Origin: Phyllobates terribilis
Lineage: Eukaryota
Length of the DNA stretch: 64,000 nt
Direction of reading: 5' to 3'
Assembly: GCF_046119375.1 (NCBI RefSeq)
Contig: NW_027362960.1
Coordinates: forward strand, 930,001 to 994,000
The notes under the pieces are model-generated. The model worked only from the letters and a program-made list of their open reading frames with translations, made no database searches and had not been told where the DNA came from. A program made the translations under genes and the position numbers. Position 1 is the stretch's first letter; every line of letters starts with the position of its first letter. Shown piece after piece: positions 3,455-47,300 of the stretch.

Positions 3455-6400
3455 CTGCCAAGAATAAATCTGATTTTATTATTTTTTAATATCAATGCCT
3501 TATATTTTATAACATTTCTCTATACATAATTCTATACAAATCAAAGTATAATGAAACTATGACCTAAGACAGTGGTGAGCCACCTGTGCACAAATCCCAT
3601 GGTACTGAACCCCTAACGTACCATCGACGAACATAATACATATACGCAGAAACTTTTGAGGCAATAAAGGGAGGATTAAAAATAAGCTTTATTACATTAC
3701 AATCTAAAGCAACAGAGAAAAATACACGCCATAAAAACAATGAAGATGGGGTATTCCCATCTCTGAGAAACTATACCAATATGTAGTAGGTATAATAAAA
3801 ATAAGATTAGCAAATATCTCCAATTAGAAATGTAGTATAGTTCTTTTGATTCGCTATGTCGCTTACCCCATGTTCAGGGCATTGCAAGTTAGTTGCTAGT
3901 GGTCATAACTATGGATACCTAAGCTACTGCAATGCTCTGCACATGGGATAAGTGACAAAGAATCAGGAGAACTATACCACATTTCTAATTGGAGTCTGAA
4001 TAAACCTCGACCTCACACATCGACAGGTACTCCGAGTGTCATGGGATCACCACGCTGACGTAGCGACCCTCCATCCCCTTACAGCAGAAGGACATGGTGG
4101 CAGAGACCACATTTGTGACTGTGCCGCACACTGGAATGTTATTGTCAGGGGAGTTCCCAATTCGGACCTCGGCCCCCATCAGTCGCTCCAGACCACAGTC
4201 CATCCTGTTAGTTATGGCGATGCTGGATATCTTGTAGCTCTGGCCCAGGTCCAGCTTCCACCAGGGATCCTTCTCCAGGTTGGTGTGGGTGCAGAAGCCA
4301 CTACTGAAGTCGGTGTCTTTGTTCCCATCGATGGCGTTCTTAGCCAATATGCTCCTGGTGGCATACGGATAGTCCGACACCTGGGAGGCCACTCTGGTCC
4401 TTGCTATGTTTGTGGCTACAGGTGCCGGAGCGCATCCCAGAGCCAGAACCACAGATCCCAGTAGAATCAGAGAAGATGGGGGTCGGTACGTCAGCGTGGT
4501 GATCCCAGGACACTCGGAGTACATTTCTAATTGGAGGCATTTTCTATTATTATTATCCAACCTACTATATTTTGGGATAGGATTTTGGAGGTGAGAATAC
4601 CCCTTCAAGGCTGTATGCTTAGGACTTATCCAGGACTCATCCAGATGCCTCATTCCATTGTTTTTTGTGATTACGTTTATCCCTCTTAAATGGCTTTTTG
4701 TATTTTTATGTGTTTTCAACTGCGATCTAATAAATTGTATTTTTAATCTCTATATTGTCTCACATTTCTCTATACACAGTCATGGTTGAAATAGTTGACG
4801 CCCTTAAAATTGTTCCAGAAAATGAAGTATTTCTCCTAGAACATTATTGCAATTACACCTGTTTTGTTATAGACACGTTTATTTCCTTTGTGTGTATTGT
4901 CACTGATCTTTTCTACAGAAATGTTCAATGGAGAATCAAAACTGGACCTTGACCAGATTATTACCTGACCCTACTTCTAAACCCTTTTCTGATCTGCCTA
5001 CATACTTCTTGTTGACCGCAGAATGGTTTGGCTTCTCACTTGACTGTCCTTCCGGGACGTGTACTGCTGCTAGATATTGACCTTGGCTTCTCCAGCTTAG
5101 ATGTTCACCTGCCTGACTTCTGTGTGTGGCCCGGCTCTCTTCTTGACATTCAGCTGTAATCTGGCAACTCACAACTACATTACAATTGGAGACATGGCGC
5201 CTTTCTGCAGCAAATAAAATTCCATTTAACCAATGAAACTTTGCTGCCAAAATGCGTTAATCAAAAAAGGTGCAAAAAAAAGCTTTTTTTGTTATGCATC
5301 AAATCTATCTGCAAGTAAAATGCACGTCAATTACTTGTGTGATCAAACTCATAATATAATGACCACAGGATCTGTGACGTCTCTGTATCTAGTGGTCACT
5401 ACTCACCTGGGTGGTCATATGTAGGAATCTCCTCTTTACACCGCTCATCACCCCTCACATATGTCTCTGTAGTATTAATATGGGTCAGATCTTCACCCTG
5501 AAACAAATATTGTAAAAGTCACAGACAGATGGAGAAGTCCCATCTATGATCAGCTCTAATCCTGCCATCTCCACCGTTCTCATTACACAAGTATAAAACA
5601 TATAATACTGGTGGATAAAACAAGACTGAGCACAAGACCTTCACAGCCATCTACACATCATAGGGGAGATCTCATGACACCTTCTCTCCATCTACCTGAT
5701 GATCCTGAGGAACATTGGGGTCTTCTTGTTTACAGTCCTGTGGAAGAAGAGGACGGGGACATCTCTCTGGTGTTGTCCTCTTACTGGATAGATCTGGAGG
5801 AAACACATACAGGGACTGAATTCATTCTTTACTAGTGTTGAGCCACCCCCGTAGTGTTCGGGTTCGGTTCGGTTCGTCGAACACCGGGATGTTCGAGGAA
5901 CTGTTCGTCGAACTGTTCGTCGAACACCTTAGAACACCGTCGAACACCGTTAAAACCAATGGCAGGCAAACAAAAACACATAGAAACACATAGAAAACAC
6001 CTGCAAAGGTGTCCAAAAGCTGACAAACTGCTCAGAAGACACTCTCTTTAAAAAAGCCGGCCGGCAAATTCAGCAGCGGCATACACCGGTACCCGACAAT
6101 TTAGACAAGAAGGAATAGAGCATCACACATAGATTAGATAGATAGAAACATGTCAGTCACACATATAAGAAGCACGGTGACAGTGTTGGTTACTTCACTT
6201 GTCATTTAGTGTAAAGGATTTATTAAAAAAAATATTAGTGTTTTCATGCACCGTCTCTTTAAAAAAGCCGGCCGGCAATTCAGCATCTGTACCCGACAAT
6301 TTAGAACAGAAAGAATAGAGCTTCACACATAGATTAGATAGATAGAAACATGTCAGTCACATATATAATAAGTACAGTGATAGTGTTGCTTACTGTACTT

Positions 6401-9400: not shown

Positions 9401-12400
9401 AATGAACTCGGCTCACCTCATGCACGTCACTGACAGCGTGGGAAAATTCTCCTGCACTCAGCGCTTCAGCGTGGGAGAATTCTTACACTGAAGCGCTGAG
9501 TGCAGGAGAATTCTTCCACGCTGTCAGTGACGTGCAGGAGGTGAGCTGAGTTCATTGGACATGAGCTCACCTTATGCACGTCACTGACAGCGTGGGAAAA
9601 TTCTCCTGCACTCAGCGCTTCAGCGTGGGAGAATTCTCACGCTGAAGCGCTGAGTGCAGGAGAATTCTCCCACGCTGTCAGTGACGTGCAGGAGGTGAGC
9701 TGAGTTCATTGGACATGAGCTCACCTTATGCACGTCACTGACAGCGTGGGAGAATTCTCCTGCACTCACCGCTTCAGCGTGAGAATTTTCCCACGCTGTC
9801 AGTGACGTGCATGAGGTGAGCCGAGTTCATTGGACATGAACTCGGCTCATCTGGATGTCGTCACAGAGAGACGCTGAGCAGCGCAAGCAAGCCTGCGCTT
9901 CTCAGTGTCTGCGGGATGAGAGGCTGGATGGCAGCGTTCTGCTGCGGTCCAGCCTGTCATCTCGATGTAGCAGAGCTGAAGTTGTCGTGGGAACCATGGA
10001 AAGGTAAGGATGAGGTTGCTTTTTTTTTCTTTTATTGCAGGAGATCGTTGGCTTCAGCTGGAATGGGCGTGACGGTAAGTATGGTTTAATTTAGAACAAT
10101 AAAGGATTGTGTCTTTATTTCAATTAAAGGACTTTATTCTGGGTGTTTGTGTTTTTTTTTACTTTGACTATGGGGTTAGTAATGGGGGTGTCTTATAGAC
10201 GCCTCTCCATTACTAACCTGGGCTTGATGTCAGCTGGCATTATAAGCTGACATCAACCCCAACCCTATTACCCCCTGCCACCGCACCAGGGCAGCGTGGA
10301 AGAGCGAGGCTAAGTGCCAGAATTGGCGCATCCTATGAATGCGCCATTTCTGGGGCGGCTGACGGCTGGTGTTTCTAGCCTGGGAGGGGGCCAATATTCA
10401 TGGCTCCCTTCCTGGGCTATTAATATCAGCCCCCAGCTGTCTGCCTAGCCTTTGCTAGCTATTAAATTAGGTGGGACCCCACGTCATTTTTTTTGGGGGG
10501 TCCCCCATTTTAATAGCTAGTAAAGGCTATGTATTCAGCTGGGGGCTGATATTAGTAGCCTGGGAAGCTCCGTGGGTATTAGGCTGAGTTCACACGATGC
10601 GTATTTCATGCGTTTCCGCGGCGTTTTTGCAGTTGCGTAAACGCCGCGGAAACGCATGAAAAACGCATGGTAGAAGGGAAGCAATGTTCCCCAATGGAAA
10701 TCCGCATGTGCTGTGCCCATGATGCGGATTTTTCCGCAGCGTTAACGCTGCGGTCAAAAATCCGCAGCATGTCAATTAATTTTGCGGAAACGCGGCGATT
10801 TCGCCGCCATTGACTTGCATTAGAACGCGCCAATTCCGCAAGACAGCATTTGTACTTGCGTTATTGGCGCGTTCTAATATGCGGATGGTACCCGGGTGTG
10901 GAGGAGAGGAGAGTCTCATCCACACCCAGGTACCATTAAAAAAGCTGTAAAACAAGAATAAAATAAAAAATAAATGTATTCTTACCATCTGTCGGCCCGC
11001 GCAGCGCTCCCGCTTGGTTCCCGGCACTTGCAGTGAGTTGTAGGACCTGCGGTGACGTCAGAGTCATGTGATGGGTCACGTGACGCTGACGTCGGCAGGT
11101 CTTTCAATTCAAAGTTGCCGGCAGCCGGGAACTTTGTAAAGCAGGACAGCGCGGGCCATCAGAGGTAAGTATATACACTCTCTCGGGTCACACTATATAA
11201 ATCCATGCTGTTTGCATGGATTTATATAGTGTGACCTAGTTGTCAAGCACTTTCCAGGTGATGCTAAAATCGCCTGGAAAGCGCTTGTCAATCTGCATGC
11301 GGAAACGCATGTCAATCTGCATGTGGATCCGCATGTATTCTGCAGGAAAAACGCATGCACAATCTGCATGCGTTTTTTCTGCCAGGGAGATGCAGAAATG
11401 ATGCAGAAATTTTCTGCTTCATTTCTGCATCGTGTGCACATACCCTTACCCCCTTCCCAGGCTTCAAACATCTGCCCCAGCCGTCTGCTTAACCTCCGCT
11501 AGAGCCTAAAATTAAGGGGAACCCCACGCCAATTTTTTTAATAATAAATCCTTTATTTTAATACTAAATGACAAGTACAGTAACCAACACTATCACTGTA
11601 CTTCATATATATGTGACTGACATGTTTCTATCTATCTAATCTATGTGTGATTCTCTATTCTTTCTATTCTAAATTGTCGGGTACCGCTGCTGAATTGCCG
11701 GCCGGCTTTTTTAAAGAGACGGTGCATGAAAACACTATTATTTTTTTTGATAAATCCTTTACGCTAAATGACAAGTACAGTAAGCAGCACTTTCACTGTA
11801 CTTCGTATATATGTGGCTGACATGTTTATATCTATCTAATCTATGTGTGAAGCTCTATTCTTTCGGTTCTAAATTGCCGGGTACAGGTGTATGCCGCTGC
11901 TGAATTGCCGGCTTTTCATGTTTCACTGTTGGCACTGTTCCCATCGATTTGGGCAATCACTGTAATGCCACAACCACCATGGCTGTGGCATTACAGTGAG
12001 TGGCAGACAATCCCTGCATGATTGGTGCTCTAAATAGCGCCAGACATGCAGGACGCGCTTTTGGTGCACGAACAGTTATCGAACATAACCTCGAACAGCC
12101 GAATTTTTTGCAAATCGTTCGGGTTCGTCGAACAACTGGAACACCGCCCAAAACAGCTCGAATTTGAGATTGGCGAACAGTTCTAGTCGAACACCGCTCA
12201 TCTCTATTCTTTACATACAGATAATTATAGGCCGTGTGTAATTAGTCCTATTACCTGGTGATGTGAGGGACTGGGGAACCTCCATCATGAAGTCCTTGTA
12301 CAGATCTTTGTGTTCTTCTAAATATTCCCACTCCTCCATGGAGAAATAGACAGCGACATCCTGACATCTTATAGGAACCTGACACATACAATGATACCGT

Positions 12401-12833
12401 CATCCCCCAGATCCCTTCATAGCATTACTGTATAATGTCCCAGCAGTGTCACCTCTCCAGTCAGCAGCTCAATCATCTTGTAGGTGAGTTCTAGGATCTT
12501 CTGGTCTTTGATGTCCTCATGTATCAGGGGGTGAGGTGGAGGCCCCGTGATTGGGCTCAGGGGTCTTCCCCATCCCTCAGACACAGGGTTCTGACACCGC
12601 TCACTAGAGGTCTTCTTCACTACTATGTAATCCTGGTTATGGAGAGACACATTAATAAATCTCCCTCCAGACATTTCCAGAGTCCTCACCTCTCCAGTTC
12701 TGTCCATCTGTTATTCCCATAGATAAGAATGATGTAATGTGACGTCATCAGAATCTCTCACCTCTCCAGTAAGCCGGAAGAGGATCTCTAGGGTGAGGTG
12801 GAATATCCTCTCCGCCATCTTGTCTCTGTCCAT
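2247..12833 (-). CDS. ZNF-A: KRAB-like C2H2 zinc-finger protein (XlCOF/XlCGF-like), 6 coding exons, 590 aa, 12 fingers
   Basis: Minus-strand exons 12833-12762, 12632-12453, 12378-12255, 5793-5696, 5497-5407, 3454-2247. All introns are GT-AG with matching phases; the total is 1773 nt with no internal stop. Contains a KRAB-A-like box [14 protein letters not shown] and TGEKPY linkers. Confidence 0.9.
3747..4605. mobile_element. Palindromic MITE (T2/Kolobok-like ends), host of the fucolectin insert
   Basis: Ends ggggtattcc ... gaatacccct; 3750-3835 is the reverse complement of 4521-4605. Confidence 0.5.
3995..4520 (-). pseudogene. F-type lectin (fucolectin) pseudogene insert, collapsed form
   Basis: Signal peptide joined to an F-type lectin domain with the H-x26-R-x-D-x4-R motif. 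The start codon is deleted and a TGA follows VIP. Flanked by ACATTTCTAATTGGAG at 3979-3994 and 4521-4536. Confidence 0.88.
4777..4901 (+). mobile_element. Tc1 terminal-repeat remnant
   Basis: cagtcatgg...aaattgttccagaaaatgaagtatttctc resembles amphibian Tc1 TIRs as I recall them; no partner end was found. Confidence 0.5.
5407..5793 (-). CDS. ZNF-A exons 4 (5793-5696) and 5 (5497-5407)
   Basis: [33 protein letters not shown] and [30 protein letters not shown], with canonical splice sites. Confidence 0.88.
6044..6640. repeat. About 200-211-bp tandem repeat x3 (two inverted copies at 11540-11914)
   Basis: ctctttaaaaaagccggccggc starts at 6044, 6255 and 6455. Confidence 0.85.
6052..11914. repeat. 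Giant nested inverted repeat, axis about 8564
   Basis: The left arm is the reverse complement of the right arm. Mirror ORF pairs 8165-8410/8606-8956 and 8158-8370/8751-8963 have outer coordinates summing to 17121. Confidence 0.92.
10582..11445. mobile_element. PIF/Harbinger-type MITE nested in the right palindrome arm
   Basis: TTA TSD (10579-10581, 11446-11448); imperfect TIR GGCTGAGTTCACACGATGC / GCATCGTGTGCACATACCC; absent at the mirror position (about 6725) in the left arm. Confidence 0.88.
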
Positions 12834-12902
12834 ATCAACCTTTGACAGGAAACTTCTCTTATATAGAAGATCTTCACTGAGAGGATCCGATATTGTAGAG
12901 AC
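12255..12902 (-). CDS. ZNF-A exons 1-3 (N-terminal region and KRAB-A-like exon)
   Basis: [24 protein letters not shown] / [13 protein letters not shown]...ELLTGE / [41 protein letters not shown]. Confidence 0.88.
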
Positions 12903-13984
12903 CTGAATGAGAAGAAGATGAGAAGATGTAACGTCATCAATAATTCTATGTAATAATACAATCACTGATTCCGGTATAAAGCAGTAATCTGTGGATCTGA
13001 TCCTGGATGATGCCGGAAGAAGAAGTGGATTTTTATGGCGGCCGTTAATGAGCTTCGCTTTGAGGACTGGAGGAGGTTTGGCCTGAACGCTGCACTCGTG
13101 GTGTGAACACGGACATAGTAGATTATTTAGGGATATTTTCTTGTCCTGCCCTAAACTTGCTTATTCAAATGAATAGGTCCACGAAAAAGAACAGCCTGTC
13201 CACGGATGATAGCTGTGTGTTAAAGAGTTTATCCAGGACTATATTATTTTTATAACTATGGGCAGAAGAAGTAAAAGGCAGATAGTTCCTAACTGCCTGC
13301 CTGCCCTGCCTCAATGTCTGCGGGAACAGAGCGGTCACGGACTGCTCCTGCCAGTGACTCTGCGGTTTCTAATGAGTCACGTAGACGGAGCAGCGGCTTC
13401 TCTTTGGCTCTGCTTTCTTGATGGGACGTGACTGACGACATCACACTGATTGTCAGCTGCCTCCCTGCTGCCTCCCTGCGAGCAGCCAGCGGTCAATCAG
13501 AGGGATGATTTATTTCACCATGCAAAAAAAACAGACACAAAATAGACGCATAGTGTGAATAACGGCAAATTCTGAGAGACAATAATGGGGAATCTCCACA
13601 TACCTCCACCTGCAGACAGGGCCGCCATCAGGGCATCACTGCCCTTACTGCTGTTTGGGGCCCCGTGAGCAGCAGTACAGAGAGGGGCCGGGTCTAGTCA
13701 GGGCCCCCCTCTTGTGCGTCTGCTCACGGCGCTCCATGCACGGCACTCCATGCTGCAATAAAGTGCCGAGCACTGGGGCGCACACCGCCTTAGATGGCGC
13801 ACATATTGGCACCGAGTTCCTTACTGAAGCTGCGCCGCTGCAGCAGCTCCTTCATACTTCAGGAGTCAGGAGCACCCGGTGGCGGCGTGCACCTCCTCAT
13901 CGCAACAGGAGCGCCAGGATGCTGCAGGGATCGTATGTGGGGTAAGTATGACAATTTAATTTTTTTTAAAAAAATTAAATGGAG

Positions 13985-36674: not shown

Positions 36675-38033
36675 TGTGACCCACTACTACTCAGGTAGCG
36701 TTAGCCCTCCCTGGGAAAGGTGTACTCGGACTGCGGGCCGGTGGTAGAGGGGGATGCAGTGGTGGCCTTGGCTCAGTCCGTGGCCAGGGCGCACACATTA
36801 AAAATATGGGGTAGTGGATGAGTGGTTATTTGTCGGCTACGCCACCTGTGGTTTCTGCTGAGGACCACCAGCGCTGCGCCAGTCCTCTGAGGCCGGTGTT
36901 CTAGCAGCTTGGGATGGAATAGCTCCCCGCAGGTGGAGCCAGGCCTCAGGGCAGAGTAGAAGAAGTGCAGTGCAGAGGAATGGTGGGTGCGGTGCCGCGC
37001 AGAAATGAGAGAGAAGAGGCGGTGTATGAAGTCATCCAGGTTTTACTCACGGTAGACTTGTTTTCAGCCACAAAGCTTCTCTTTGTTCCTCACGGCGCGC
37101 TGCGGCCACCAGGATGGGGTTCAGCTCACTCCGGGTAGCTCGGGTGCACCAGACAAAACCCCTCCACCAGTGTGTTCCTCTCACTTGCTGTACTAGAACC
37201 GCCTCGTGCCCCTACTAAGTCCCGTACGGGTACCGCAATGTCCGCTGAAGGTGGCTTGTAGCCCCCGGACCGCCTAGGTCCCTTATTGGTGACTGGGGTG
37301 TAAACGTAGCATAAGGCTGGGGTCCCTCTGGATAGACGCAGATTAAGGGGATACAGGTGGCGACTCCGCTCCATCCATATTCCCCCTGGGATCCACTTCA
37401 GCCTTCGGACTTTTCTGACAGAGACTTGGAGTACAAAGTCAGATAATCGGGGACCGGTACCCCCTCTTGCGGCAGAAGTCTCTCTGGCGGGGCCAGAATA
37501 AGGGTAGCAGGTGGCAACTCTGCTCCGTCCACATCCCCTGAGATCCTTTCGCCTGTGGAGCTCTTCTCCTCTGCTCCCCTCCTAGGCCTTCTGGTGTGGA
37601 CTAAGACATAGGACACAGCCAGCTGTAACTCAACTCTGCCCAAGCCCCCAATCTCAAGGCCTGAGACCGGGAATCACAGCCTCCTGAGGCAGCTGCAGCT
37701 TGTACTAACTGTCACCTCCAGGGAACTGCGACAAAAGACCCGGTATTAAAGATGGCATCCATATTTATATGGATGTATTAGTATAACCGTAAAGTGCTTC
37801 ATCCACCCTACTCACTACAAGGTTCCCCCTACTTTTGGTCCCGCCCTTACTCCTCCATTCAGGACTGGGGTACCACATTGTGCTCTAAACCCCCTTCAGA
37901 ATGGGAGTGTGTAGTGTTGGATGTGTGGTGGGGCCCTGTGTGGTGCTCCATCCTTACCTCGGAGAGGAGATACCACACCTCGTTCCATGAAGTGCAGTAC
38001 CTCTGTGGCGACTGAACTCTCAGGGGCGCCACA
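36675..38033. mobile_element. Solo LTR inserted in the Gypsy RT
   Basis: TG...CA bounds; TAAC at 36669-36672 (followed by 2 extra T) and 38034-38037; excision rejoins the RT KYITTLDLTK motif. Confidence 0.8.
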
Positions 38034-39292
38034 TAACCACCTTGGATTTAACTAAGAAATATTGGCAAATCCCTATGTCACAAGAAGCCAAGGAGAAGAC
38101 TGCCTTCTCTATGCCCAACGGATGTTTCCAATATGTCCGGATGCTGTTTTGTCTGCAGGGAGCCCTGGCCACCTTCCAGAGTGCCATGGGCTGGATCCTC
38201 GCAATCCGTAAGAATTACACTGCATCATACTTTATATATCGTAATCTTCAGCCCAGATTGGAGATGTCACCTGCAAAAGGTCCGGTCGGTGTTTGATCCT
38301 CTCAGGAAGGCAGGGTTTTCTATAAATCTGAAAACATTTTGCCATGGGAAATAAAGAGGCCAAATAACTAGGATATGTAGTAGGTAGAGGCGAGATCAAA
38401 CCCCAGATCAGTAAAGTAGATGCAATCCAAAACTGGCCAAGACCACACTTAAAGAAGCAAGTTAGAGCCTTTCTGAAAATGAAAATAACAGACAGCAGTC
38501 ATGTAATGTGTGGTCTCTAAGTAAAGGTAGTGTGACGGGAGCTAGTTACCCCATCCGCAGATGTCCAATCTTCTTCTGCCGGCCCCTGACATGGAAAGGC
38601 TTTTCTTACACTGGGATATATAAAATATGACTATCGCAGTGTGTCTCCAAGATGGACTAAAACTTTTATTCTTACAAGCAGGTTTTATAGAGAATCACAC
38701 AGGCTATTTTTATCACCCATTGTTCTCACCAGATAATACCCACAGTAGGCTCCCAGACAGCAGTTAGGCAACAACCCATTAATCAGCACATTGTCTGTTT
38801 GCCCCTGCTAAGTGAGCACAGGAAGGTGGGGGCCAGGAGTGCTTTGGTCACATCACAAAATGTCCAACAATATGTGATCCACAATATTCGCCCCACTTTG
38901 TAACATTATGTCCCATTAGCTGCATAGGCGCTACGACAACCCCCATGTGGCAAAATCTTGGAGTACGGGGTTGATCCATCACAGGTAAATTTGCAATAAA
39001 AAAGATGGCATCACTTGCTAACTTCTGCGATCAACCAGTGAGGAGTTATCGCAGAAAATTAGAGATTGAATAAAACCAAGAAGGGTGGAGACCAGCCCAC
39101 GTGAGGTCATCACAAGGGAGTGTGTGGGCAGCGCCCCCGTCGGCATAAAAGATCAGGCCGAATATTGATCTATACTCATGCTGGGTTATACATATTTGTG
39201 TAAGCGGGGGTCCTGTTCCATAACGGTTCGTTTGAGTGCTTCCCTCCAGCTAAACTGAATCGTCTCTGCGATCGGTCTAGTAAGTCCTTCTA

Positions 39293-42200
39293 TTAATCCC
39301 TTTTTATTTTGTGTAACTGTATATGCTGTATTAAACATGAACCCTGGGTGAAACATTTCCTACATTCTGAACATGAATATGGCTTCTCTCCTGTATGACT
39401 TCTGTAATGTTTAAGCAAATCTGACTTATTGCTGAAACATTTCACACATTCTGAACATGAAAATGGCTTTTCTCCTGTCTGACTTTTTTGATGCATAAGC
39501 AATTTAGATTTATGTTCAAAACATTTCCCACATTCTTGACATGAATATGGCTTTTCTCCAGTGTGAATTCTTTGATGTTTATGAAGATCTGGTTTCTGGA
39601 TAAAACATTTCCCACATTCTGAACATGAATATGGCTTCTCTCCTATGTGAAATTGTTGATGTTTATGAAGATCTCGTTTCTGGATAAAACATTTCCCACA
39701 TTCTGAACATGAATATGGCTTCTCTCCTGTATGACTTCTGTAATGTTTAAGCAAATATGACTTATCGCTGAAACATTTCCCACATTCTGAACATGAAAAC
39801 GGCTTTTCTCCTGTGTGACTTCTCTGATGTGTAAGCAATTTATATTTAGTTTTAAAACATTTCTCACATTCTGAACAGGAAAATGGTTTCTTTTCTGTGG
39901 GAATTATTTGATGTTCGACATCCCTTCTCTGGCTTTCATTTTGCTTAACAGTCTGTGATGAATCCAAGTAGATGACGGATTGAAAAGGCTCAGATGATTG
40001 ATTTCTGCTCTGAAGGGCTGGAGGTATAGCTGGAATAATGGCACGCTTTTCATAGGTATCTGGTTTGACACCACAGTCATCTGCCAAGAATAAATCTGAT
40101 TTTATTATTTTTTAATATCAATGCCTTATATTTTATAACATTTCTCTATACATAATTCTTTACAAATCAAAGTATAATGAAACTATGACCTATGACAGTG
40201 GTGAGCCACCTGTTCACAAATCCCATGGTACTCAACCCCTAATATACAATCGACAAACATAATACATACAGGCAGAAACGTTTGAGACAATAAAGGGAGG
40301 ATTAAAAATAAGGTTTATTACATTACAATCTACAGATAAAAATACACGCCAAAACATGTAAGATGGGGTATTCCCATCTCCGAGAAACTATCCCAATATG
40401 TAGTAGGTGTAATAAAAATAAGATTAGCAAATATCTCCAATTAGAAATGTATAGTTCTTCTGATTCGCTATGTTGCTTACCCCATGTTCAGGGCATTGCA
40501 AGTTAGTTGCTAGTGGTCATAACTATGGATACCTAAGCTACTGCAATGCTCTGCACATGGGGTAAGTGACAAAGAATCAGGAGAACTATACCACATTTCT
40601 AATTGGAGTCTGAATAAACGTCGACCTCATACATCGACAGGTACTCCGAGTGTCATGGGATCACCACGCTGACGTCCTTCTGCTGTAAGGGGATGGAGGG
40701 TCGCTACAAGGTGGCAGAGACCACATTCGTGACTGTGCCGCACACTGGAATGTTATTGTCGGGGGAGTTCCCGATTCGGACCTCGGCCCCCATCAGTCGC
40801 TCCAGACCACAGTCAATCCTGTTGGTTATGGCGACGCTGGATATCTTGTAGCTCTGGCCCAGGTCCAGCTTCCACCAGGGATCCTTCTCCAGGTTGGTGT
40901 GGGTGCAGAAGTCACTATTGAAGTCGGTGTCTTTGTTCCCATCGATGGCATTCTTAGCCAATATCCTCCTGGTGGCATACGGATAGTCCGACACCTGGGA
41001 GGCCACTCTGGTCCTTGCTATATTTGTGGCTCCAGGTGCAGGAGCACATCCCAGAGCCAGAACCACAGATCCCAGTAGAATCAGAGAAGATACAAGATTC
41101 ATCCTGCAGGAGATGTAAGTGAAGGTCCTGTGTAATCTCCACATCTGATAAATGCTGGTTCCCTGGTAACCAGTGACTATTCCCTGCAGTCTGTACTCAC
41201 AGGAGCTGCTCCTGCACAATCTGGATGAATCTTGTATCTTCTCTGATTCTACTGGGATCTGTGGTTCTGGCTCTGGGATTTGCTCCTGCACCTGCAGCCA
41301 CAAACATAGCAAGGACCAGAGTGGCCTCCCAGGTGTCGGACTATCCGTATGCCACCAGGAGCATATTGGCTAAGAATGCCATCGATGAGAACAAAGACAC
41401 CGACTTCAATAGTGACTTGTGCACCCACACCAACCTGGAGACTGATGGGGGCCGAGGTCCGAATTCGGAACTTCCCCGACAATAACAATCCGGTGTGCGG
41501 AACAGTCACGAATGTTATCTCTGCCACCTTGTGCTTCTGCTGTAAGGGGATGGGGGTCGGTACGTCAGCGTGGTGATCCCAGGACACTCGGAGTACATTT
41601 CTAATTGGAGGTATTTTCTATTATTATTATCACACCTACTATATTTTGGGATAGGATTTTGGAGATGGGAATACCCCTTCAAGGCTGTATGCTTAGGACT
41701 TATCCAGGACTCATTCAGATGCCTCATTCCATTGTTTTTTGTGATTACATTTATCCCTCTTAAATGGCTTTTTGTATTTTTATGTGTTTTCAACTCCGAT
41801 CTAATAAATTGTATTTTTAATCTCTATATTGTCTCACATTTCTCTATACACAGTCATGGTTGAAATAGTTGACGCCCTTAAAATTGTTCCAGAAAATGAA
41901 GTATTTCTCCTAGAACATTATTGCAATTACACCTGTTTTGTTATAGACACGTTTATTTCCTTTGTGTGTATTGTCACTGATCTTTTCTAGTGAAATGTTC
42001 AATGGAGAATCAAAACTGGACCTTGACCAGATTATTACCTGACCCTACTTCTAAACCCTTTTCTGATCTGCCTACATACTTCTTGGTGACCGCAGAATGG
42101 TTTGGCTTCTCACTTGACTGCCCTTCCGGGACGTGTACTGCTGCTAGATATTGACCTTGGCTTCTCCAGCTTAGAGTCCACCTGCCTGACTTCTGTGTGT

Positions 42201-43513
42201 GGCCCGGCTCTCTTCTTGACATTCAGCTGTAATCTGGCAACTCACAACTACATTACAATTGGAGACATGGCGCCTTTCTGCAGCAAATAAAATCCCATTT
42301 AACCAATGCAACTTTGCTACCAAAACGCGTTAATCAAAAAAGGTGTAAAAAAGAAAAGCTTTTTTTGTTATGCATCAAATCTATCTGCAAGTAAAATGCA
42401 CGTCAATTACTTGTGTGATCAAACTCATAATATAATGACCACAGGATCTGTGACTTCTCTGCATTTAGTGGTCATTACTCACCTGGGTGGTCATATGTAG
42501 GAGTCTCCTCTTTACACCGCTCATCACCCCTTCCCATATGTCTCTGTAGTATTAATATGGGTCAGATCTTCACCCTGAAACAAATATTGTAAAAGTCACA
42601 GACAGATGGAGAAGTCCCATCTATGATCAGCTCTAATCCTGCCATCTCCACCATTCTACACAAGTAGAAAACATATAATACTGGTGGATAAAACAAGACT
42701 GAACACAAGACTTTCACAGCCGTCTACACATCATAGGGGAGATCTCATGACACCTTCTCTCCATCTACCTGATGATCCTGAGGAACATTGGGATCTTCTT
42801 GTTTACAGTCCTGTGGAAGAAGAGGACGGGGACATCTCTCTGGTGTTGTCCTCTTACTGGATAGATCTGGAGGAAACACATACAGGGACTGAATTCATTC
42901 TTTACATACAGATAATTATAGGCCGTGTGAATTCAGTCCTGTCTATTACCTGGTGATGTGAGGGGCTGGGGAACCTCCATCATGATGTCCTTGTACAGAT
43001 CTTTGTGTCCTTCTAAATACTCCCACTCCTCCATGGAGAAATAGACAGCGACATCCTGACACCTTAGAGGAACCTGACACATACAATGATACCGTCATCC
43101 CCCAGATCCCTTCATAGCGTTACTGTATAATGTCCCAGCAGTGTCACCTCTCCAGTCAGCAGCTCAATCATCTTGTAGGCGAGTTCTAGGATCTTTTGGT
43201 CATTGATGTCCTCATGTATTAGGGGGTGAGACGGAGGCCTTGTGATTGGGCTCAGGGGTGTCACCCATCCCTCAGACACAGGGTTCTGACAGCGCTCACT
43301 AGAGGTCTTCTTCACTACTATGTAATCCTGGTTATGGAGAGACACATTAATAAATCTCACTACAGACATTTCCAGAGTCCTCACCTCTCCAGTTCTGTCC
43401 ATCTGTTTTTCCCATAGATAAGAATGATGTAATGTGACGTCATCAGAATCTCTCACCTCTCCAGTAAGCCGGAAGAGGATCTCTAGGGTGAGGTGGAATA
43501 TCCTCTCCGCCAT
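39293..43513 (-). pseudogene. ZNF-B: paralog with 7 fingers and a +1 frameshift in exon 5
   Basis: Exons 43513-43457, 43327-43148, 43073-42950, 42866-42769, 42574-42483 (92 nt vs 91 in ZNF-A) and 40080-39293. The frame reads TAT GGG AAG GGG TGA, predicting a 169-aa finger-less product. Confidence 0.82.
40609..41594. pseudogene. Head-to-head inverted pair of fucolectin pseudogene copies
   Basis: Minus copy ATG at 41102 and plus copy ATG at 41225, with a 122-bp spacer; 16-bp flanking duplication at 40593-40608 and 41595-41610. Confidence 0.9.
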
Positions 43514-44311
43514 CTTGTCTCGCTCCCTATCAACCTTTGACAGGAAACTTCTCTTATATAGAAGATCTTCACTGAGAGGATCCGATATTGTAGAGACCTG
43601 AATGAGAAGAAGATGAGAAGATGTAACGTCACCAATAATTCTATGTAATAATACAATCACTGATTCCGGTATAAAGCAGTAATCTGTGGATCTGATCCTG
43701 GATGATGCCGGAAGAAGAAGTGGATTTTTATGGCGGCCATTAATGAGCTTCGCTTTGAGGACCGGAGGAGGTTTGGCCTGAACGCTGCACTCGTGGTGTG
43801 AACACGGACATAGTAGATTATTTAGGGATATTTTCTTGTCCTGCCCTAAACTTGCTTATTCAAGTGAATAGGTCCACGAAAAAGAACAGCCTGTCCACGG
43901 ATGATATCTGTGTGTTAAAGAGTTTATCCAGGACTATATTATTTTTATAACTATGGGCAGAAGAAGTAAAAGGCAGATAGTTCCTAACTGCCTGCCTGCC
44001 CTGCCTCAATGTCTGCGGGAACAGAGCGGTGACGGACTGCTCCTGCCAGTGACTCTGCGGCTTCTAATGAGTCACGTAGACGGAGCAGCGGCTTCTCTTT
44101 GGCTCTGCTTTCTTGATGGGACGTGACTGACGACATCACACTGATTGTCAGCTGCCTCCCTGCTGCCTTCCTGCCAGCAGCCAGCGGTCAATCAGAGGGA
44201 TGATTTATTTCACCATGCAAAAAAAACAGACACAAAATAGACGCATAGTGTGAATAATGGCAAATTCTGAGAGACAATAATGGGGAATCTCCACATACCT
44301 CCACCTGCAGA

Positions 44312-47300
44312 CAGGGCCGCCATCAGGGCATCACTGCCCTTACTGCTGTTTGGGGCCCCGTGAGCAGCAGTACAGAGAGGGGCCGGGTCTAGTCAGGGCC
44401 CCTCTCTTGTGCGTATGCTCACGGCGCTCCATGCACGGCACTCCATGCTGTAATAAAGTGCCGAGCACTGGGGCGCACACCGCCTTAGACGGCGCACATA
44501 TTGGCACCGAGTTCCTTACTGAAGCTGCGCCGCTGCAGCAGCTCCTTCATACTTCAGGAGTCAGGAGGACCCGTGGCGGCGTGCATCTCCTCGTCGCAAC
44601 AGGAGCGCCAGGATGCTGCAGGGATCGTATGTGGGGTAAGTATGACAATTTTATTTTTTAAAAAAAAATTAAATGGAGTGGGGGGAGGATGAGCTGCACA
44701 TGATGGGGAATTGGGAGTGGAGGGAGGATGAGCTGCACATGGTGGGGAATTTGGAGTGGGAGGAGGATGAGCTGCACATGGGGAATTGACAGTGGGGGAG
44801 GATGAACTGCACATGGGGAATTAGCAGTGGGGGAGGATGAGCTGCACATCATGGGGAATTTGGAGTGGGAGGAGGATGAACTGCACATGGGGAATTAGCA
44901 GTGGGGGAGGATGAGCTGCACATGGGGAATTAGCAGTGGGGGGAGGATGAGCTGCACGTGATGGGGAATTGGGAGGGGGGAGAGGATGAGCTGCACATGA
45001 TGTGGAATTTGGAGTGGGAGGAGGATGAGCTGCACATGGGGAATTGGCAGTGGGGGAGGATGAGCTGCACATGTGGAATTATCAGTGGGGGAGGATGAGC
45101 TGCACGTGATGGGGAATTGGGAGTGGGGAGAGGATGAGCTGCACATGATGGGGAATTTGGAGTGGGGGAGGATGAGCTGCACATGGGGAATTAGCAGTGG
45201 GGGAGGATGAGCTGCACATGGGGAATTGGCAGTGGGGGAGGATGAGCTGCACATGGGGAATTATCAGTGGGGGAGGATGAGCTGCACATGGGGAATTGGC
45301 AGTGGGGGAGGATGAGCTGCACATGGGGAATTAGCAGTGTGGGTAGGATGAGCTGCACGTGATGGGGAATTGGCAGTAGGGGAGGATGAGCTGCACGTGA
45401 TGGGGAATTGCCAGTGGGGGGTGGATGAGCTGCACATAATGATGAGTTGGAAGTGGGGGGAATGTTGGGAGTGGTGAGGAGAATGAACTGCACATGGGGA
45501 ATTGGCAGTGGGGGGGGGGTGAGCTGCACATGGGGAATTGGGAGTGGAGGGGTGAGCTGCACATGGAGGATTGAGAGTGGGGGGAGGATGAGCGCATGGT
45601 GGATTGGGAGTGGTGGGTGGGAAGAGCGAACGGTGAATTAGGGGTGGGGAGAGCAAATGGTGGATTGAAAAATGGGAGTGGGGAAAGCACATGATGAATT
45701 GGGAGTGGGGTGGGGAAAGCAAATGGTGAATGGGGGATGAGGGAGAGTAAATGATGAATAGAGGGTGGGGGTGGGGAGAGCAGGAAATAATGAATTGGGG
45801 CAGAGGGTGCATGTAAATATAATGAATTGGGGAGCAGGAGGTACAGAGTGGGGGGCGTTGCGGATGCAGGAGTGTGACTGGTAATAAATTCTGGGAAAGA
45901 GTACAGGCTCTAATTAATTTACATATTTATTAGGTGGGGAAAGTGGCTATTTACAGTTATTTGGGGCGCAGGGATGGATTACAATTATGTTTGGAATGGT
46001 GGGTTGCATAATGACTAATTATATATTAATGGTGGGTGCACGTCTGTATTCAGCTGTGTAATGTAGAAGTTGGGGAATATGCTCTACATAACTGTGTTAT
46101 TTTATTCAAAGACAAGTCCTGGCTGGAAGAAGTGATGGTGATCTGTGCTGGATGAAGGAGAAAAGTGAAGATGAAGGACTTCAACTAGAGACGTCACTGG
46201 TGAGTCAGTGTATTACATGTACAATGACACTATATACTATGTACAGGGCTCTTGTGTATAATGTCACTGGTGATCCTTGTATTACCTGTAAACTGACACT
46301 ATATACAGAGCTCCTGTGTATAATGTCACTGGTGATCACTGTATTACCTGTACACTGACACTATATACAGAGCTCCAGTGTATAATGTCACTGATGATCA
46401 CTATATTACCTGTATACTTACATTATACACTGTATACCATGTACAGAGCTCCGGTGTATAATGGCACTTATGGTAATATTAGTATTATGTTTTTTTTATT
46501 AATGATCAGTATTGTAGTATTCGGTGACAATGTGGTGGTAATATGTGGTCTGGTCATGGTGTGGCATTTTTTGTCCCTTCTGTGTGGTATTATTCGGTCA
46601 CTATGTGGTGGTAATATGTGGTCTGGTCATGGTGCAGTGGTATTCCTTGTATGTGGTATTATTCGGTTACTATGTGGTGGTAATATGTGGTCCGGTCATG
46701 GTGTGGTGGTATTTGATCCTTGTATGTGGTATTATTGGTCATTTTAAAAAATGTGTATGACACATTCCCTTAAAGAAAAATAAATAAAAATATACCTAAA
46801 AAGAGTATTGGGTACTTTAAGAAATTTTAATAGGTTAGAATAGAGTAGGGCTCGGCCAGAAGAGTCTACCTTATCGTGGTGGTGGTTTTAAAAATCTTTT
46901 AGCCAAAACAAAAGCTGCTGGCTATGTACAGTGGGGAAAAAAGACTATTTAGTCAGCCACCAATTGTGCAAGTTCTTCCACTTAAAAATATGAGAGAGGC
47001 CTGTAATTCACATCACAGTTAGATCTCAACTATGAGAGACAAATTGAGAAAACAAATCCTAAAAATCACATTCTCTGATTTGGAAAGAATTTTTTTTTCA
47101 AATTTTGGTAGAAAATAAGTATTTGGTCAATTACAAACAAGCAAGATTTCTGTCTCTCACAGACCTGTAACTTCTTCTTTAAGAGGCTCCTCTGTTCTCC
47201 ACTCATTATCTGTAGTACTGGCACCTGTTTGAACTTGTTATCAGTATAAAAGACACCAGTCCGCAACCTCAAACAGTCACACTCCAAACTCCACTATGGT

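What the first reader, a model, noticed from the sequence alone, without database searches (positions are those of the whole stretch)
40593..41610. Inverted-repeat fucolectin cassette in a ZNF intron: candidate hairpin-RNA locus against an immune lectin
Seen: two intronless F-type lectin copies head to head, bounded by one 16-bp TSD, so they entered as one event. About 216 bp from the ATG pair with roughly 6 mismatches, then a bulge of about 89 nt, then about 80 bp more, with a 122-nt loop. Neither arm is functional: the minus arm has a TGA and a micro-inversion, and the plus arm deletes the KDPWW-to-RxD segment at a CTGGAG microhomology. Both B arms share AATAGTGAC where A has AGTAGTGGC, compatible with arm-to-arm conversion. 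The two 5' flanks differ (an acceptor-like ctcctgcag|G ATG versus another leader). Established: inverted pseudogene pairs can yield endo-siRNAs, and twin priming gives inversions but not full inverted duplications. Inference: ZNF-B transcription would produce long dsRNA matching fucolectin mRNAs, which could be why a frameshifted gene stays transcribed.
Basis: partly seen in the sequence, partly recalled or inferred. Interest (0 to 1): 0.7.

Follow-up and report, generated by a model that had tools for sequence, protein, structure and literature searches.

The report
Decaying head-to-head fucolectin pseudogene hairpin
Two broken, head-to-head copies of a poison-frog fucose-binding lectin message sit in a zinc-finger gene intron and would fold into a long RNA hairpin, but they look like a decaying pseudogene and nothing found here shows that they silence lectin genes.

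Summary
Window 40593-41610 is an inverted pair of fucolectin coding copies between two exact 16-bp direct repeats. All the listed lesions are present: TGA, 30-bp micro-inversion, 89-nt deletion at CTGGAG.

New here:
- The cassette lies in one arm of a very abundant palindromic MITE, whose other arm and genome-wide copies show the uninterrupted site. The 16-mer is therefore a true target-site duplication.
- The MITE lies in the last intron (40081-42482) of a minus-strand KRAB-like zinc-finger gene. That gene's upstream exon is frameshifted in this copy.
- A second copy at 3979-4536, in a paralogous duplicon, has lost the palindrome centre.
- At least seven cassette-derived proteins are annotated as lectins in Phyllobates terribilis.

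The arms differ by 4.5%, no less than the two duplicons differ, and every polarisable site argues against arm-to-arm conversion.

RNA contigs cover the arms only at or below the depth of the neighbouring intron. They show no RNA-only A-to-G changes. No small-RNA data exist.

Best reading: a neutral, decaying palindromic, probably RNA-derived, pseudogene spread by gene-cluster duplication. The hairpin-siRNA idea is untested and unsupported.

The scan had already met this cassette family on five other pieces of this genome.

The parts
40593..40608 (.). Left copy of the 16-bp target-site duplication
   Evidence: Exact direct repeat with 41595-41610. It occurs once, uninterrupted, in the opposite MITE arm (40435-40450) and in the MITE family consensus from DNA loose ends.
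40609..41102 (-). Minus arm: fucolectin coding copy from the ATG (41102) to the end of the lectin domain. It lacks the last ~9 codons of real fucolectins.
   Evidence: Pfam F5_F8_type_C_2 at 1e-17. 95% identical to P0001 and 85% to P0002. Real genes continue ...YSDSVTNRNKVCS.
40674..40703 (-). 30-bp micro-inversion inside the minus arm. It creates a TAG at codon 133.
   Evidence: Direct repeat D4 with 41531-41556. Alignment with copy A. The inverted piece carries minus-arm diagnostic bases, so it inverted in place.
40653..40655 (-). TGA at codon 150 of the minus arm. It is shared with copy A and absent from the plus arm.
   Evidence: The annotated 149-aa proteins end at the same codon.
41103..41224 (.). 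Spacer (hairpin loop) between the two ATGs. On the minus strand it has a donor-like GTGAGT (41200-41195) and an acceptor-like CCTGCAG just before the ATG.
   Evidence: Reading it as retained 5'-leader intron sequence is inference.
41225..41594 (+). Plus arm: second fucolectin copy. It carries an 89-nt deletion at CTGGAG (41435-41440) and a 1-nt deletion near 41549, and ends 34 nt earlier than the minus arm.
41595..41610 (.). Right copy of the 16-bp target-site duplication
40365..40592 (.). High-copy palindromic MITE: left arm, central small hairpin and the start of the right arm up to the insertion point
   Evidence: Inverted repeats I3, I5, I6, I9-I11. DNA-run depth is about 1000 times that of the unique flanks, and family termini show as loose ends at 40365.
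41611..41683 (.). Rest of the MITE right arm beyond the cassette
   Evidence: Pairs with 40362-40451. Loose end at 41683.
39293..40080 (-). Terminal C2H2 zinc-finger exon of ZNF copy B
   Evidence: Pfam zf-C2H2 at 5e-35 with 7 stretches. Acceptor TTCTTGGCAG lies before 40080.
42483..42574 (-). Last exon before the cassette-bearing intron. In copy B it carries one extra base and has stops in all three frames.
   Evidence: RNA joints 42573/42768 with CT..AC ends, absent from the DNA run. Comparison with copy A.
3979..4536 (-). Paralogous cassette 'A': same duplication, same MITE, complete minus arm. Only the last 43 nt of the plus arm remain. The centre is deleted at a GAT microhomology.

Best explanation
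This is a dead, palindromic pseudogene of a dendrobatid fucolectin, from the subfamily of the annotated 'fucolectin-6-like' proteins of Phyllobates terribilis.

Origin. A head-to-head double copy of the coding region was inserted once, with a 16-bp target-site duplication, into the right arm of a high-copy palindromic MITE. The copy runs from the signal peptide to the end of the lectin domain and has no poly(A). The MITE lies in the last intron of a KRAB-like C2H2 zinc-finger gene. The copy was most probably made from RNA. A reverse transcriptase either folded back on its own product or primed on two messages from the two ends of a staggered break, with 2-4 nt microhomologies at both junctions.

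Spread and decay. The cassette multiplied only because the zinc-finger gene cluster was duplicated. Each copy now decays in ways typical of palindromes: centre deletion in copy A; and microhomology deletion, micro-inversion, stop codons and a frameshift in copy B.

RNA. Because it lies in an intron, zinc-finger pre-mRNA carries it as a long hairpin. Its most likely fate is removal with the intron, perhaps after adenosine editing, without effect on lectin genes.

Shown: structure, target-site duplication, empty site, intron setting, paralogous copy, divergence pattern, low-level RNA contigs. Inferred: RNA origin, fold-back or dual priming, fate of the hairpin.
For: True insertion:
- Exact 16-mer at both ends.
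- The site is uninterrupted in the opposite MITE arm.
- The site is uninterrupted in the MITE family consensus read from DNA loose ends at 40571 and 41594.

One event, later duplicated:
- Copy A (3979-4536) has the same duplication and the same flanks, inside a duplicon 95-97% identical by BLAST.
- Derived states shared by both minus arms against the plus arm (Ile at codon 118, TGA at codon 150) give the tree ((Bminus, Aminus), Bplus).

No homogenisation: Bminus-Bplus differ by 4.5%, Bminus-Aminus by 3.7%, and the A/B flanks by 1.9-4.6%.

Pseudogene status:
- The cassette is truncated before the C-terminal ...VTNRNKVCS of real genes.
- The conserved Cys-Cys-Pro has become Cys-Gly-Leu, and stops and frameshifts are present.
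- In copy A the ATG and TAG come from the duplication itself.

Family: seven distinct cassette-derived proteins are annotated on at least five scaffolds.

RNA origin (indirect only):
- Both arms run uninterrupted across codon 24/25. Two Ranitomeya gene models splice foreign first exons on at that point.
- A 91%-alike DNA contig loses likeness at 41031, the same point.
- The fish F-type lectin gene has introns flanking and splitting each domain (PMC12221842).

Expression:
- RNA contigs on the arms have depth 2-10, against 15-39 on the unique intron 42036-42398 in the same runs.
- The centre and plus arm are seen essentially in one run only.
- An 878-nt RNA contig of the A type runs on into the MITE and intron, as pre-mRNA would.
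Against: - No poly(A) and no L1-type endonuclease motif at the target, so this is not a classical processed pseudogene.
- An acceptor-like CCTGCAG before the minus-arm ATG and a donor-like GTGAGT in the spacer could equally be genomic DNA.
- dN/dS among the arms is 0.28-0.61 on about 25 changes. That is lower than expected for pure neutrality, though underpowered.
- All RNA evidence comes from contigs, without strand or level. Small RNAs were not examined.
Confidence: 0.72

Rival explanations
1. Functional hairpin-RNA locus. Zinc-finger pre-mRNA delivers a long double-stranded RNA that Dicer cuts into siRNAs, which silence fucolectin messages in trans.
For: - The fold is a near-perfect hairpin of -760.7 kcal/mol, with perfect runs of up to 57 bp.
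- It lies in a spliced, expressed gene family.
- A 151-nt RNA contig spans the minus-arm ATG and the loop.
- Inverted-repeat pseudogenes and intronic inverted repeats do yield endo-siRNAs in mouse (Tam 2008 and Watanabe 2008 as cited in PMC11239679).
- Frog embryos make small RNAs from intronic transposon remnants (PMC3875865).
Against: - The arms diverge as fast as neutral flanks and show no conversion.
- Sister copy A deleted the hairpin centre. Copy B lost 89 nt of one arm and inverted 30 bp of the other.
- RNA contig depth on the hairpin-specific part is at or below intron background, and in one of three runs only.
- No RNA-only A>G or T>C change is listed on the arms.
- No abundant message at least 85% alike was laid on the arms.
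- In mouse, natural endo-siRNAs from such repeats are negligible outside oocytes (PMC11239679).
Confidence: 0.07
2. DNA-level capture. A genomic fragment of a fucolectin locus was pasted into a staggered break, with no RNA step. The fragment was either already head to head, or was made palindromic by fold-back priming at a broken end.
For: - No poly(A) and no endonuclease motif.
- Microhomology at both junctions.
- Splice-site-like sequences in the spacer that could be genomic.
- Real fucolectin genes are clustered on one chromosome: accessions two apart on the 817-Mb record.
- Fold-back inverted duplications at break ends are documented (bioRxiv 10.1101/2024.12.14.628481).
Against: - Both arms are colinear with the coding sequence across the signal-peptide/domain boundary, where indirect evidence places a parental intron.
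- A 16-bp duplication suits a staggered nick pair better than a random break.
Confidence: 0.15
3. Young protein-coding gene. The minus arm, especially the centre-deleted A type with its 179-codon frame, encodes a secreted lectin, as the public annotation says.
For: - Four 179-aa and three 149-aa proteins are annotated.
- The fucose-binding His and Arg-x-Asp-x4-Arg motif is kept.
- dN/dS is below 1.
- A-type RNA contigs occur in all three RNA runs.
Against: - In this window both minus arms carry TGA at codon 150.
- Start and stop of the A frame come from the target duplication.
- The C-terminal Cys segment and one Cys of the Cys-Cys pair are missing.
- The RNA contig continues into the intron, as pre-mRNA would.
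Confidence: 0.04
4. Mobile element that carries lectin arms as long terminal inverted repeats (a fold-back or Pack-type transposon).
For: Long inverted arms, flanking direct repeats, and many copies in the genome.
Against: - The outer ends are unequal: the minus arm runs 34 nt further.
- Both copies in the window share the same 16-mer and the same MITE and intron flanks.
- 16 bp fits no known cut-and-paste superfamily (own knowledge).
Confidence: 0.02

Closest known systems
Inverted-repeat pseudogene sources of endo-siRNAs in mouse oocytes, and intronic or 3'-end inverted repeats such as Anks3 and Optn (Tam 2008, Watanabe 2008, as cited in PMC11239679)
   Same: An inverted duplicate of a coding sequence that folds into a stem of several hundred base pairs within a transcribed gene.
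   Different: No small RNAs are shown here. The arms are decaying and a sister copy has lost the hairpin. Even the mouse examples give only trace siRNAs outside oocytes.
Processed pseudogene made by LINE target-primed reverse transcription, including 5' inversion by twin priming
   Same: A coding sequence apparently without introns, a 16-bp target-site duplication, a single insertion event, and no promoter of its own.
   Different: No poly(A) tail and no TT/AAAA-type target. Both arms cover the same part of the message, so this is a full inverted duplication and not the non-overlapping pieces that twin priming gives.
Fold-back junctions and inverted duplications at LINE-1-induced break ends, some holding cDNA of cellular genes (bioRxiv 10.1101/2024.12.14.628481)
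   Same: Self-annealing of a 3' end at 2-bp microhomology gives an inverted duplication next to a reverse-transcribed insert. Whole mRNA copies were seen in such junctions.
   Different: Those are experimental or cancer rearrangements, often of flanking genomic DNA. Here the duplicated material is the insert itself, fixed in a germ line and then amplified with its host gene.
siteRNAs of Xenopus tropicalis embryos (PMC3875865)
   Same: A frog, an intron of a protein-coding gene, and a transposon remnant there as possible small-RNA source.
   Different: siteRNAs are 23-29 nt, mostly antisense to transposon remnants, and linked to repression of the host gene in cis. They do not silence a lectin in trans. 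None has been looked for in this species.

Membership tests
Hairpin-RNA / endo-siRNA locus | Long inverted repeat able to form double-stranded RNA | tested here: met
   -760.7 kcal/mol hairpin. Perfect runs of up to 57 bp.
Hairpin-RNA / endo-siRNA locus | Both arms transcribed on one RNA | tested here: inconclusive
   Low-depth RNA contigs only. One 151-nt contig covers the ATG plus loop. No contig spans both arms. Contigs give no strand or level.
Hairpin-RNA / endo-siRNA locus | 21-23-nt Dicer-type small RNAs from the stem | not testable with these tools
   No small-RNA run was offered for this organism.
Hairpin-RNA / endo-siRNA locus | Pairing maintained by selection or by conversion between arms | tested here: not met
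   The arms differ by 4.5%, at least as much as the paralogous copies. Polarised sites show no conversion. Copy A lost the centre.
Hairpin-RNA / endo-siRNA locus | Stretches identical to an expressed target message | not tested
   No nucleotide sequence of the real fucolectin genes could be fetched. No abundant contig at least 85% alike lay on the arms in three RNA runs.
LINE-made processed pseudogene | Target-site duplication of 7-20 bp | tested here: met
   16 bp, exact, with the empty site shown.
LINE-made processed pseudogene | Lacks introns that the parent gene has | tested here: inconclusive
   The arms are colinear with the coding sequence. A parental intron at codon 24/25 is supported only indirectly. 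The parent locus was not readable.
LINE-made processed pseudogene | 3' poly(A) tail next to the duplication | tested here: not met
   Both outer ends stop inside the coding sequence.
LINE-made processed pseudogene | A/T-rich endonuclease target at the nick | tested here: not met
   The duplication starts ACAT on one strand and CTCC on the other.
Twin-priming inversion | Inverted 5' piece and direct 3' piece that do not overlap | tested here: not met
   Both arms start at the same ATG and cover the same roughly 460 nt.
Functional F-type lectin | Open frame with signal peptide, whole lectin domain and its cysteines | tested here: not met
   TAG and TGA in the minus arm, frameshifts in the plus arm, Cys-Cys changed to Cys-Gly, C-terminal segment absent.
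Functional F-type lectin | Fucose-binding His and Arg-x-Asp-x4-Arg motif | tested here: met
   THTN ... NRIDCGLER is kept in the minus arm. The plus arm has deleted it.
Cut-and-paste DNA transposon with captured gene fragment | Matching termini and independent insertion sites | tested here: not met
   Unequal ends. Both window copies share one site.

The most novel reading that the evidence does not exclude
The hairpin-bearing copies of this amplified cassette family, carried in zinc-finger pre-mRNAs, feed double-stranded RNA into a germ-line or embryonic small-RNA pathway of the frog. They would thereby damp fucolectin genes or the host zinc-finger cluster. This would be a vertebrate counterpart of the fly hairpin-RNA genes, born from a fold-back retrocopy.
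Probability: 0.06. Interest if true: 0.65.

Novelty: new member of a known kind. Interest (0 to 1): 0.3.

Why it matters
As it stands, the value is mostly practical and mechanistic.
- At least seven 'fucolectin-like' gene models in the public annotation of the golden poison frog come from this dead cassette. They should not be counted as immune lectins.
- The locus is a clean natural record of an unusual insertion: a full inverted duplication of a message, with a target-site duplication but no poly(A).
- It also records how a vertebrate genome erodes a roughly 1-kb palindrome. Paralogous copies each caught a different lesion: centre deletion, microhomology deletion, in-place micro-inversion.

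Only if small RNAs were found would it bear on vertebrate RNA interference.

Tried and rejected
No other tool here holds frog genomes.
2. Small RNAs. No small-RNA or raw-read run was offered, and all runs were contigs.
3. A-to-I editing. The counts of A>G and T>C changes in the three RNA runs equal those in the DNA run, and every listed change on the arms is also in DNA. This test is weak, because contigs drop rare variants.
4. Arm-to-arm conversion. Rejected by outgroup polarisation.
5. Micro-inversion as a copy from the other arm. Rejected, because the inverted piece carries minus-arm bases.
6. Classical L1 retrocopy and twin priming. Rejected on poly(A), target motif and overlap of the arms.
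7. Transposon with lectin arms. Rejected on unequal ends and the shared site.
8. Copy number from contig depth. Not attempted, because the tool warns against it.
9. Selection test. dN/dS is 0.28-0.61, on too few changes to decide.
10. A joined spliced model of the zinc-finger gene was not built or searched. Exons were only translated one by one, by reference.

Full report
**Observation**

The repeat finder gives three collinear inverted-repeat blocks:
- 40881-41104 with 41223-41446: 224 nt, 96% complementary.
- 40706-40798 with 41440-41532: 93 nt, 91%.
- 40636-40675 with 41562-41601: 40 nt, 93%.

118 nt lie between the inner ends. Trimmed by five bases, the first block has 6 mismatches in 219 nt, and its perfect runs reach 57 bp.

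An exact 16-mer lies at 40593-40608 and 41595-41610. The pattern has six matches in the window against 0.09 expected, all within the two paralogous cassettes and their MITE arms.

The minus arm read from its ATG (41102) is 132 codons open. It hits the F5/8-type-C fold families at 1e-17. Its best relatives are proteins annotated as fucolectins in dendrobatid frogs: 95% to P0001 and 85% to P0002, both from Phyllobates terribilis. The window therefore comes from that species or a very close relative.

A three-way alignment and a codon table confirm each lesion:
- TGA at codon 150 of the minus arm.
- A 30-bp micro-inversion at 40674-40703 that also creates a TAG.
- An 89-nt deletion in the plus arm between two CTGGAG copies.
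- A 1-nt deletion further on in the plus arm.

**Surroundings**

The cassette is not in plain intron DNA. Sequence 40274-40466 pairs with 40574-40608 plus 41611-41845, so the cassette interrupts the right arm of an older palindrome.

The left arm holds the reverse complement of the 16-mer once, uninterrupted, at 40435-40450. DNA contigs of the same species give loose ends at 40571 and 41594 whose consensus is the uninterrupted repeat. The 16-mer is thus a genuine target-site duplication.

The core of that palindrome (40365-40608 plus 41611-41683) is a MITE-like repeat. Its summed depth is about a thousand times that of the unique flanks.

Three of the laid runs behave as RNA. They show joints with CT..AC ends (GT..AG on the minus strand) at 42573/42768, 42866/42950, 43071/43146 and 43326/43456. 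These are absent or nearly absent from the DNA run.

These exons encode frog zinc-finger N-terminal modules, including a KRAB-A-like box. The next exon (42483-42574) ends at a GTGAGT donor. The C2H2 exon (39293-40080; Pfam 5e-35) begins behind TTCTTGGCAG.

The cassette therefore lies in the last intron, 40081-42482, of a minus-strand zinc-finger gene. In this copy the exon 42483-42574 carries one extra base compared with the paralogous copy, and it has stops in all frames.

**A second copy and a family**

Searching the window with the frog proteins found a second cassette at 3979-4536. It lies in a duplicon 95-97% identical to 38000-44500 by BLAST. Direct alignment of the flanks gives 1.9-4.6% differences.

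The second copy has the same 16-mer at both ends and the same MITE. Its minus arm is complete and lacks the micro-inversion. Only the last 43 nt of its plus arm remain. The centre, equivalent to about 41092-41548, is missing at a GAT microhomology.

Its 179-codon frame takes its ATG from one duplication copy and its TAG from the other. In this window it is also cut by the same TGA.

Protein P0001 and six other distinct sequences belong to this family. They are 179 aa (centre-deleted type) or 149 aa (ending at the TGA). They are annotated as fucolectin-like, fucolectin-1-like or pentraxin fusion protein-like, on at least five scaffolds.

The real genes, P0002 and P0059, lie two accession numbers apart on the 817-Mb chromosome record. 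They continue past the cassette's end with ...VTNRNKVCS or similar. Every cassette copy therefore lacks the C-terminal segment.

**History read from the arms**

Over 326 shared columns the differences are:

| Comparison | Differences |
|---|---|
| B minus vs B plus | 4.6% (4.45% over all 337 columns shared by the pair) |
| B minus vs A minus | 3.7% |
| B plus vs A minus | 6.1% |
| A vs B flanks | 1.9-4.6% |

Both minus arms share derived states against the plus arm and against the real genes: Ile for Asn at codon 118, and TGA for Gly at codon 150. The inverted pair therefore existed before the duplicons split.

Both B arms agree against A at three sites that can be polarised (codons 62, 64, 132). 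At all three the real fucolectins carry the B state. A is therefore derived, and no conversion between arms is needed.

The micro-inverted piece carries minus-arm diagnostic bases, so it turned round in place.

In short, the arms have drifted apart at about the neutral pace. Each copy has collected its own palindrome-type damage.

dN/dS among the arms is 0.28-0.61 on about 25 changes. This is suggestive but not decisive.

**Origin**

No poly(A) and no A/T-rich nick site are present. The two outer ends differ by 34 nt.

Both junctions allow short microhomology. At the right junction this is TAC or AC. At the left it is up to four bases, if the parent reads Ser-Asp-Ser with the same codons.

Evidence that the parent has an intron which the cassette lacks is indirect but convergent:
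- Two Ranitomeya gene models attach foreign first exons exactly before (A)TNLAR, at codon 24/25.
- A 91%-alike DNA contig loses likeness at 41031, the same point.
- In the striped-bass F-type lectin gene each domain is split by, and flanked by, introns (PMC12221842).

I therefore favour an RNA template. The copy would have been made either by a reverse transcriptase that snapped back on its product, or by priming from both ends of the staggered break on two messages. The second option would also explain the two different 5' leaders and the unequal 3' ends.

Fold-back junctions that hold reverse-transcribed inserts are documented for LINE-1 (bioRxiv 10.1101/2024.12.14.628481).

A DNA-level capture therefore keeps about 15%.

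**The hairpin-RNA idea**

Any transcript through the intron would fold. The minimum free energy is -760.7 kcal/mol for the 1018 nt. The precedent is real: inverted-repeat pseudogenes and intronic inverted repeats give endo-siRNAs in mouse, though in trace amounts outside oocytes (PMC11239679). Frog embryos make 23-29-nt RNAs from intronic transposon remnants (PMC3875865).

The data here do not go further.
- Contig depth in the three RNA runs is 1.8-9.6 on the minus arm.
- On the centre and plus arm it is 0-9.5, essentially in one run only.
- On the unique intron 42036-42398 it is 15-39 in runs X9 and X10, and 4-9 in X12.
- The longest RNA contig on the arms (878 nt) is of the centre-deleted type and runs on into the MITE and intron, as pre-mRNA would.
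- One 151-nt contig (41068-41209) shows that a hairpin-type copy is present in RNA.
- Every base change listed on the arms is also in the DNA run.
- The A>G and T>C tallies of the RNA runs match those of the DNA run.
- No abundant contig at 85% likeness or more lies on the arms, so no close, highly expressed target message was seen in these samples.

All runs are contigs, so strand, ends and level cannot be judged. Small RNAs were not available.

Together with the lack of any sign that pairing is maintained, and the loss of the hairpin in the sister copy, I put a working hairpin-RNA function at about 6-7%.

**Comparison and verdict**

This is an inverted-repeat pseudogene, a known kind of object, with an unusual birth: a full inverted duplication, a target-site duplication and no poly(A). 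It fails the defining tests of a classical LINE retrocopy (poly(A), nick motif), of twin priming (non-overlapping pieces), of a transposon (equal ends, independent sites) and of a functional lectin (open frame).

For the hairpin-RNA class it meets only the structural test.

The scan had already met the same cassette family on five other pieces of this genome. Those notes read it as a fold-back retro-pseudogene spread by zinc-finger gene duplication. My own tests agree on structure, the single event, duplication and decay. I could not test the claims about the parent's introns directly.

Interest is modest.

Noticed in passing
window 3979-4536: The centre-deleted cassette copy has a 179-codon frame whose ATG and TAG both come from the two copies of the target-site duplication. 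In this window it carries TGA at the position where four annotated 179-aa proteins have Gly. The retained 43-nt plus-arm remnant has the Gly codon, so conversion from the remnant in other copies is conceivable.
   Followed up: partly
window 42483-42574: The exon of zinc-finger copy B has one extra base compared with copy A (about 5409-5500), which puts stops in all three frames. Copy A reads through to the GTGAGT donor.
   Followed up: yes
window 40365-40608 + 41611-41683, and 41794-42035: Two very high-copy repeats. The first is a palindromic MITE with termini GGGGTATTCCC.../...GGGAATACCCC. Both are also very deep in the RNA-like runs. The weaker pairing of 40274-40346 with 41773-41845 suggests that the MITE sits inside a still older palindrome.
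   Followed up: partly
window 42950-43071 (minus strand): Spliced exon encoding a KRAB-A-like box ([26 protein letters not shown]). Neighbouring exons carry the frog-type LTLEI..LLTGE modules. No Pfam hit at 0.01 for the 43115-43660 frame.
   Followed up: partly
window 5833-12206: Colinearity between the two duplicons is broken here in copy A: 41549-42905 matches 4475-5832, and 42897-44500 matches 12206-13805. This fits the 6.4-kb hAT insertion noted earlier by the scan.
   Followed up: partly
window 40609-41102, 41225-41594, 3995-4477: dN/dS among the three arms is 0.28-0.61 on about 25 point changes. This is lower than expected for a long-dead pseudogene but statistically weak (binomial p 0.03-0.13).
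   Followed up: partly
proteins P0005, P0011, P0046 (Ranitomeya imitator): Public gene models of real fucolectins carry unrelated N-terminal exons or skip a 20-residue block. This points to annotation problems in this lectin family across dendrobatid genomes.
   Followed up: no
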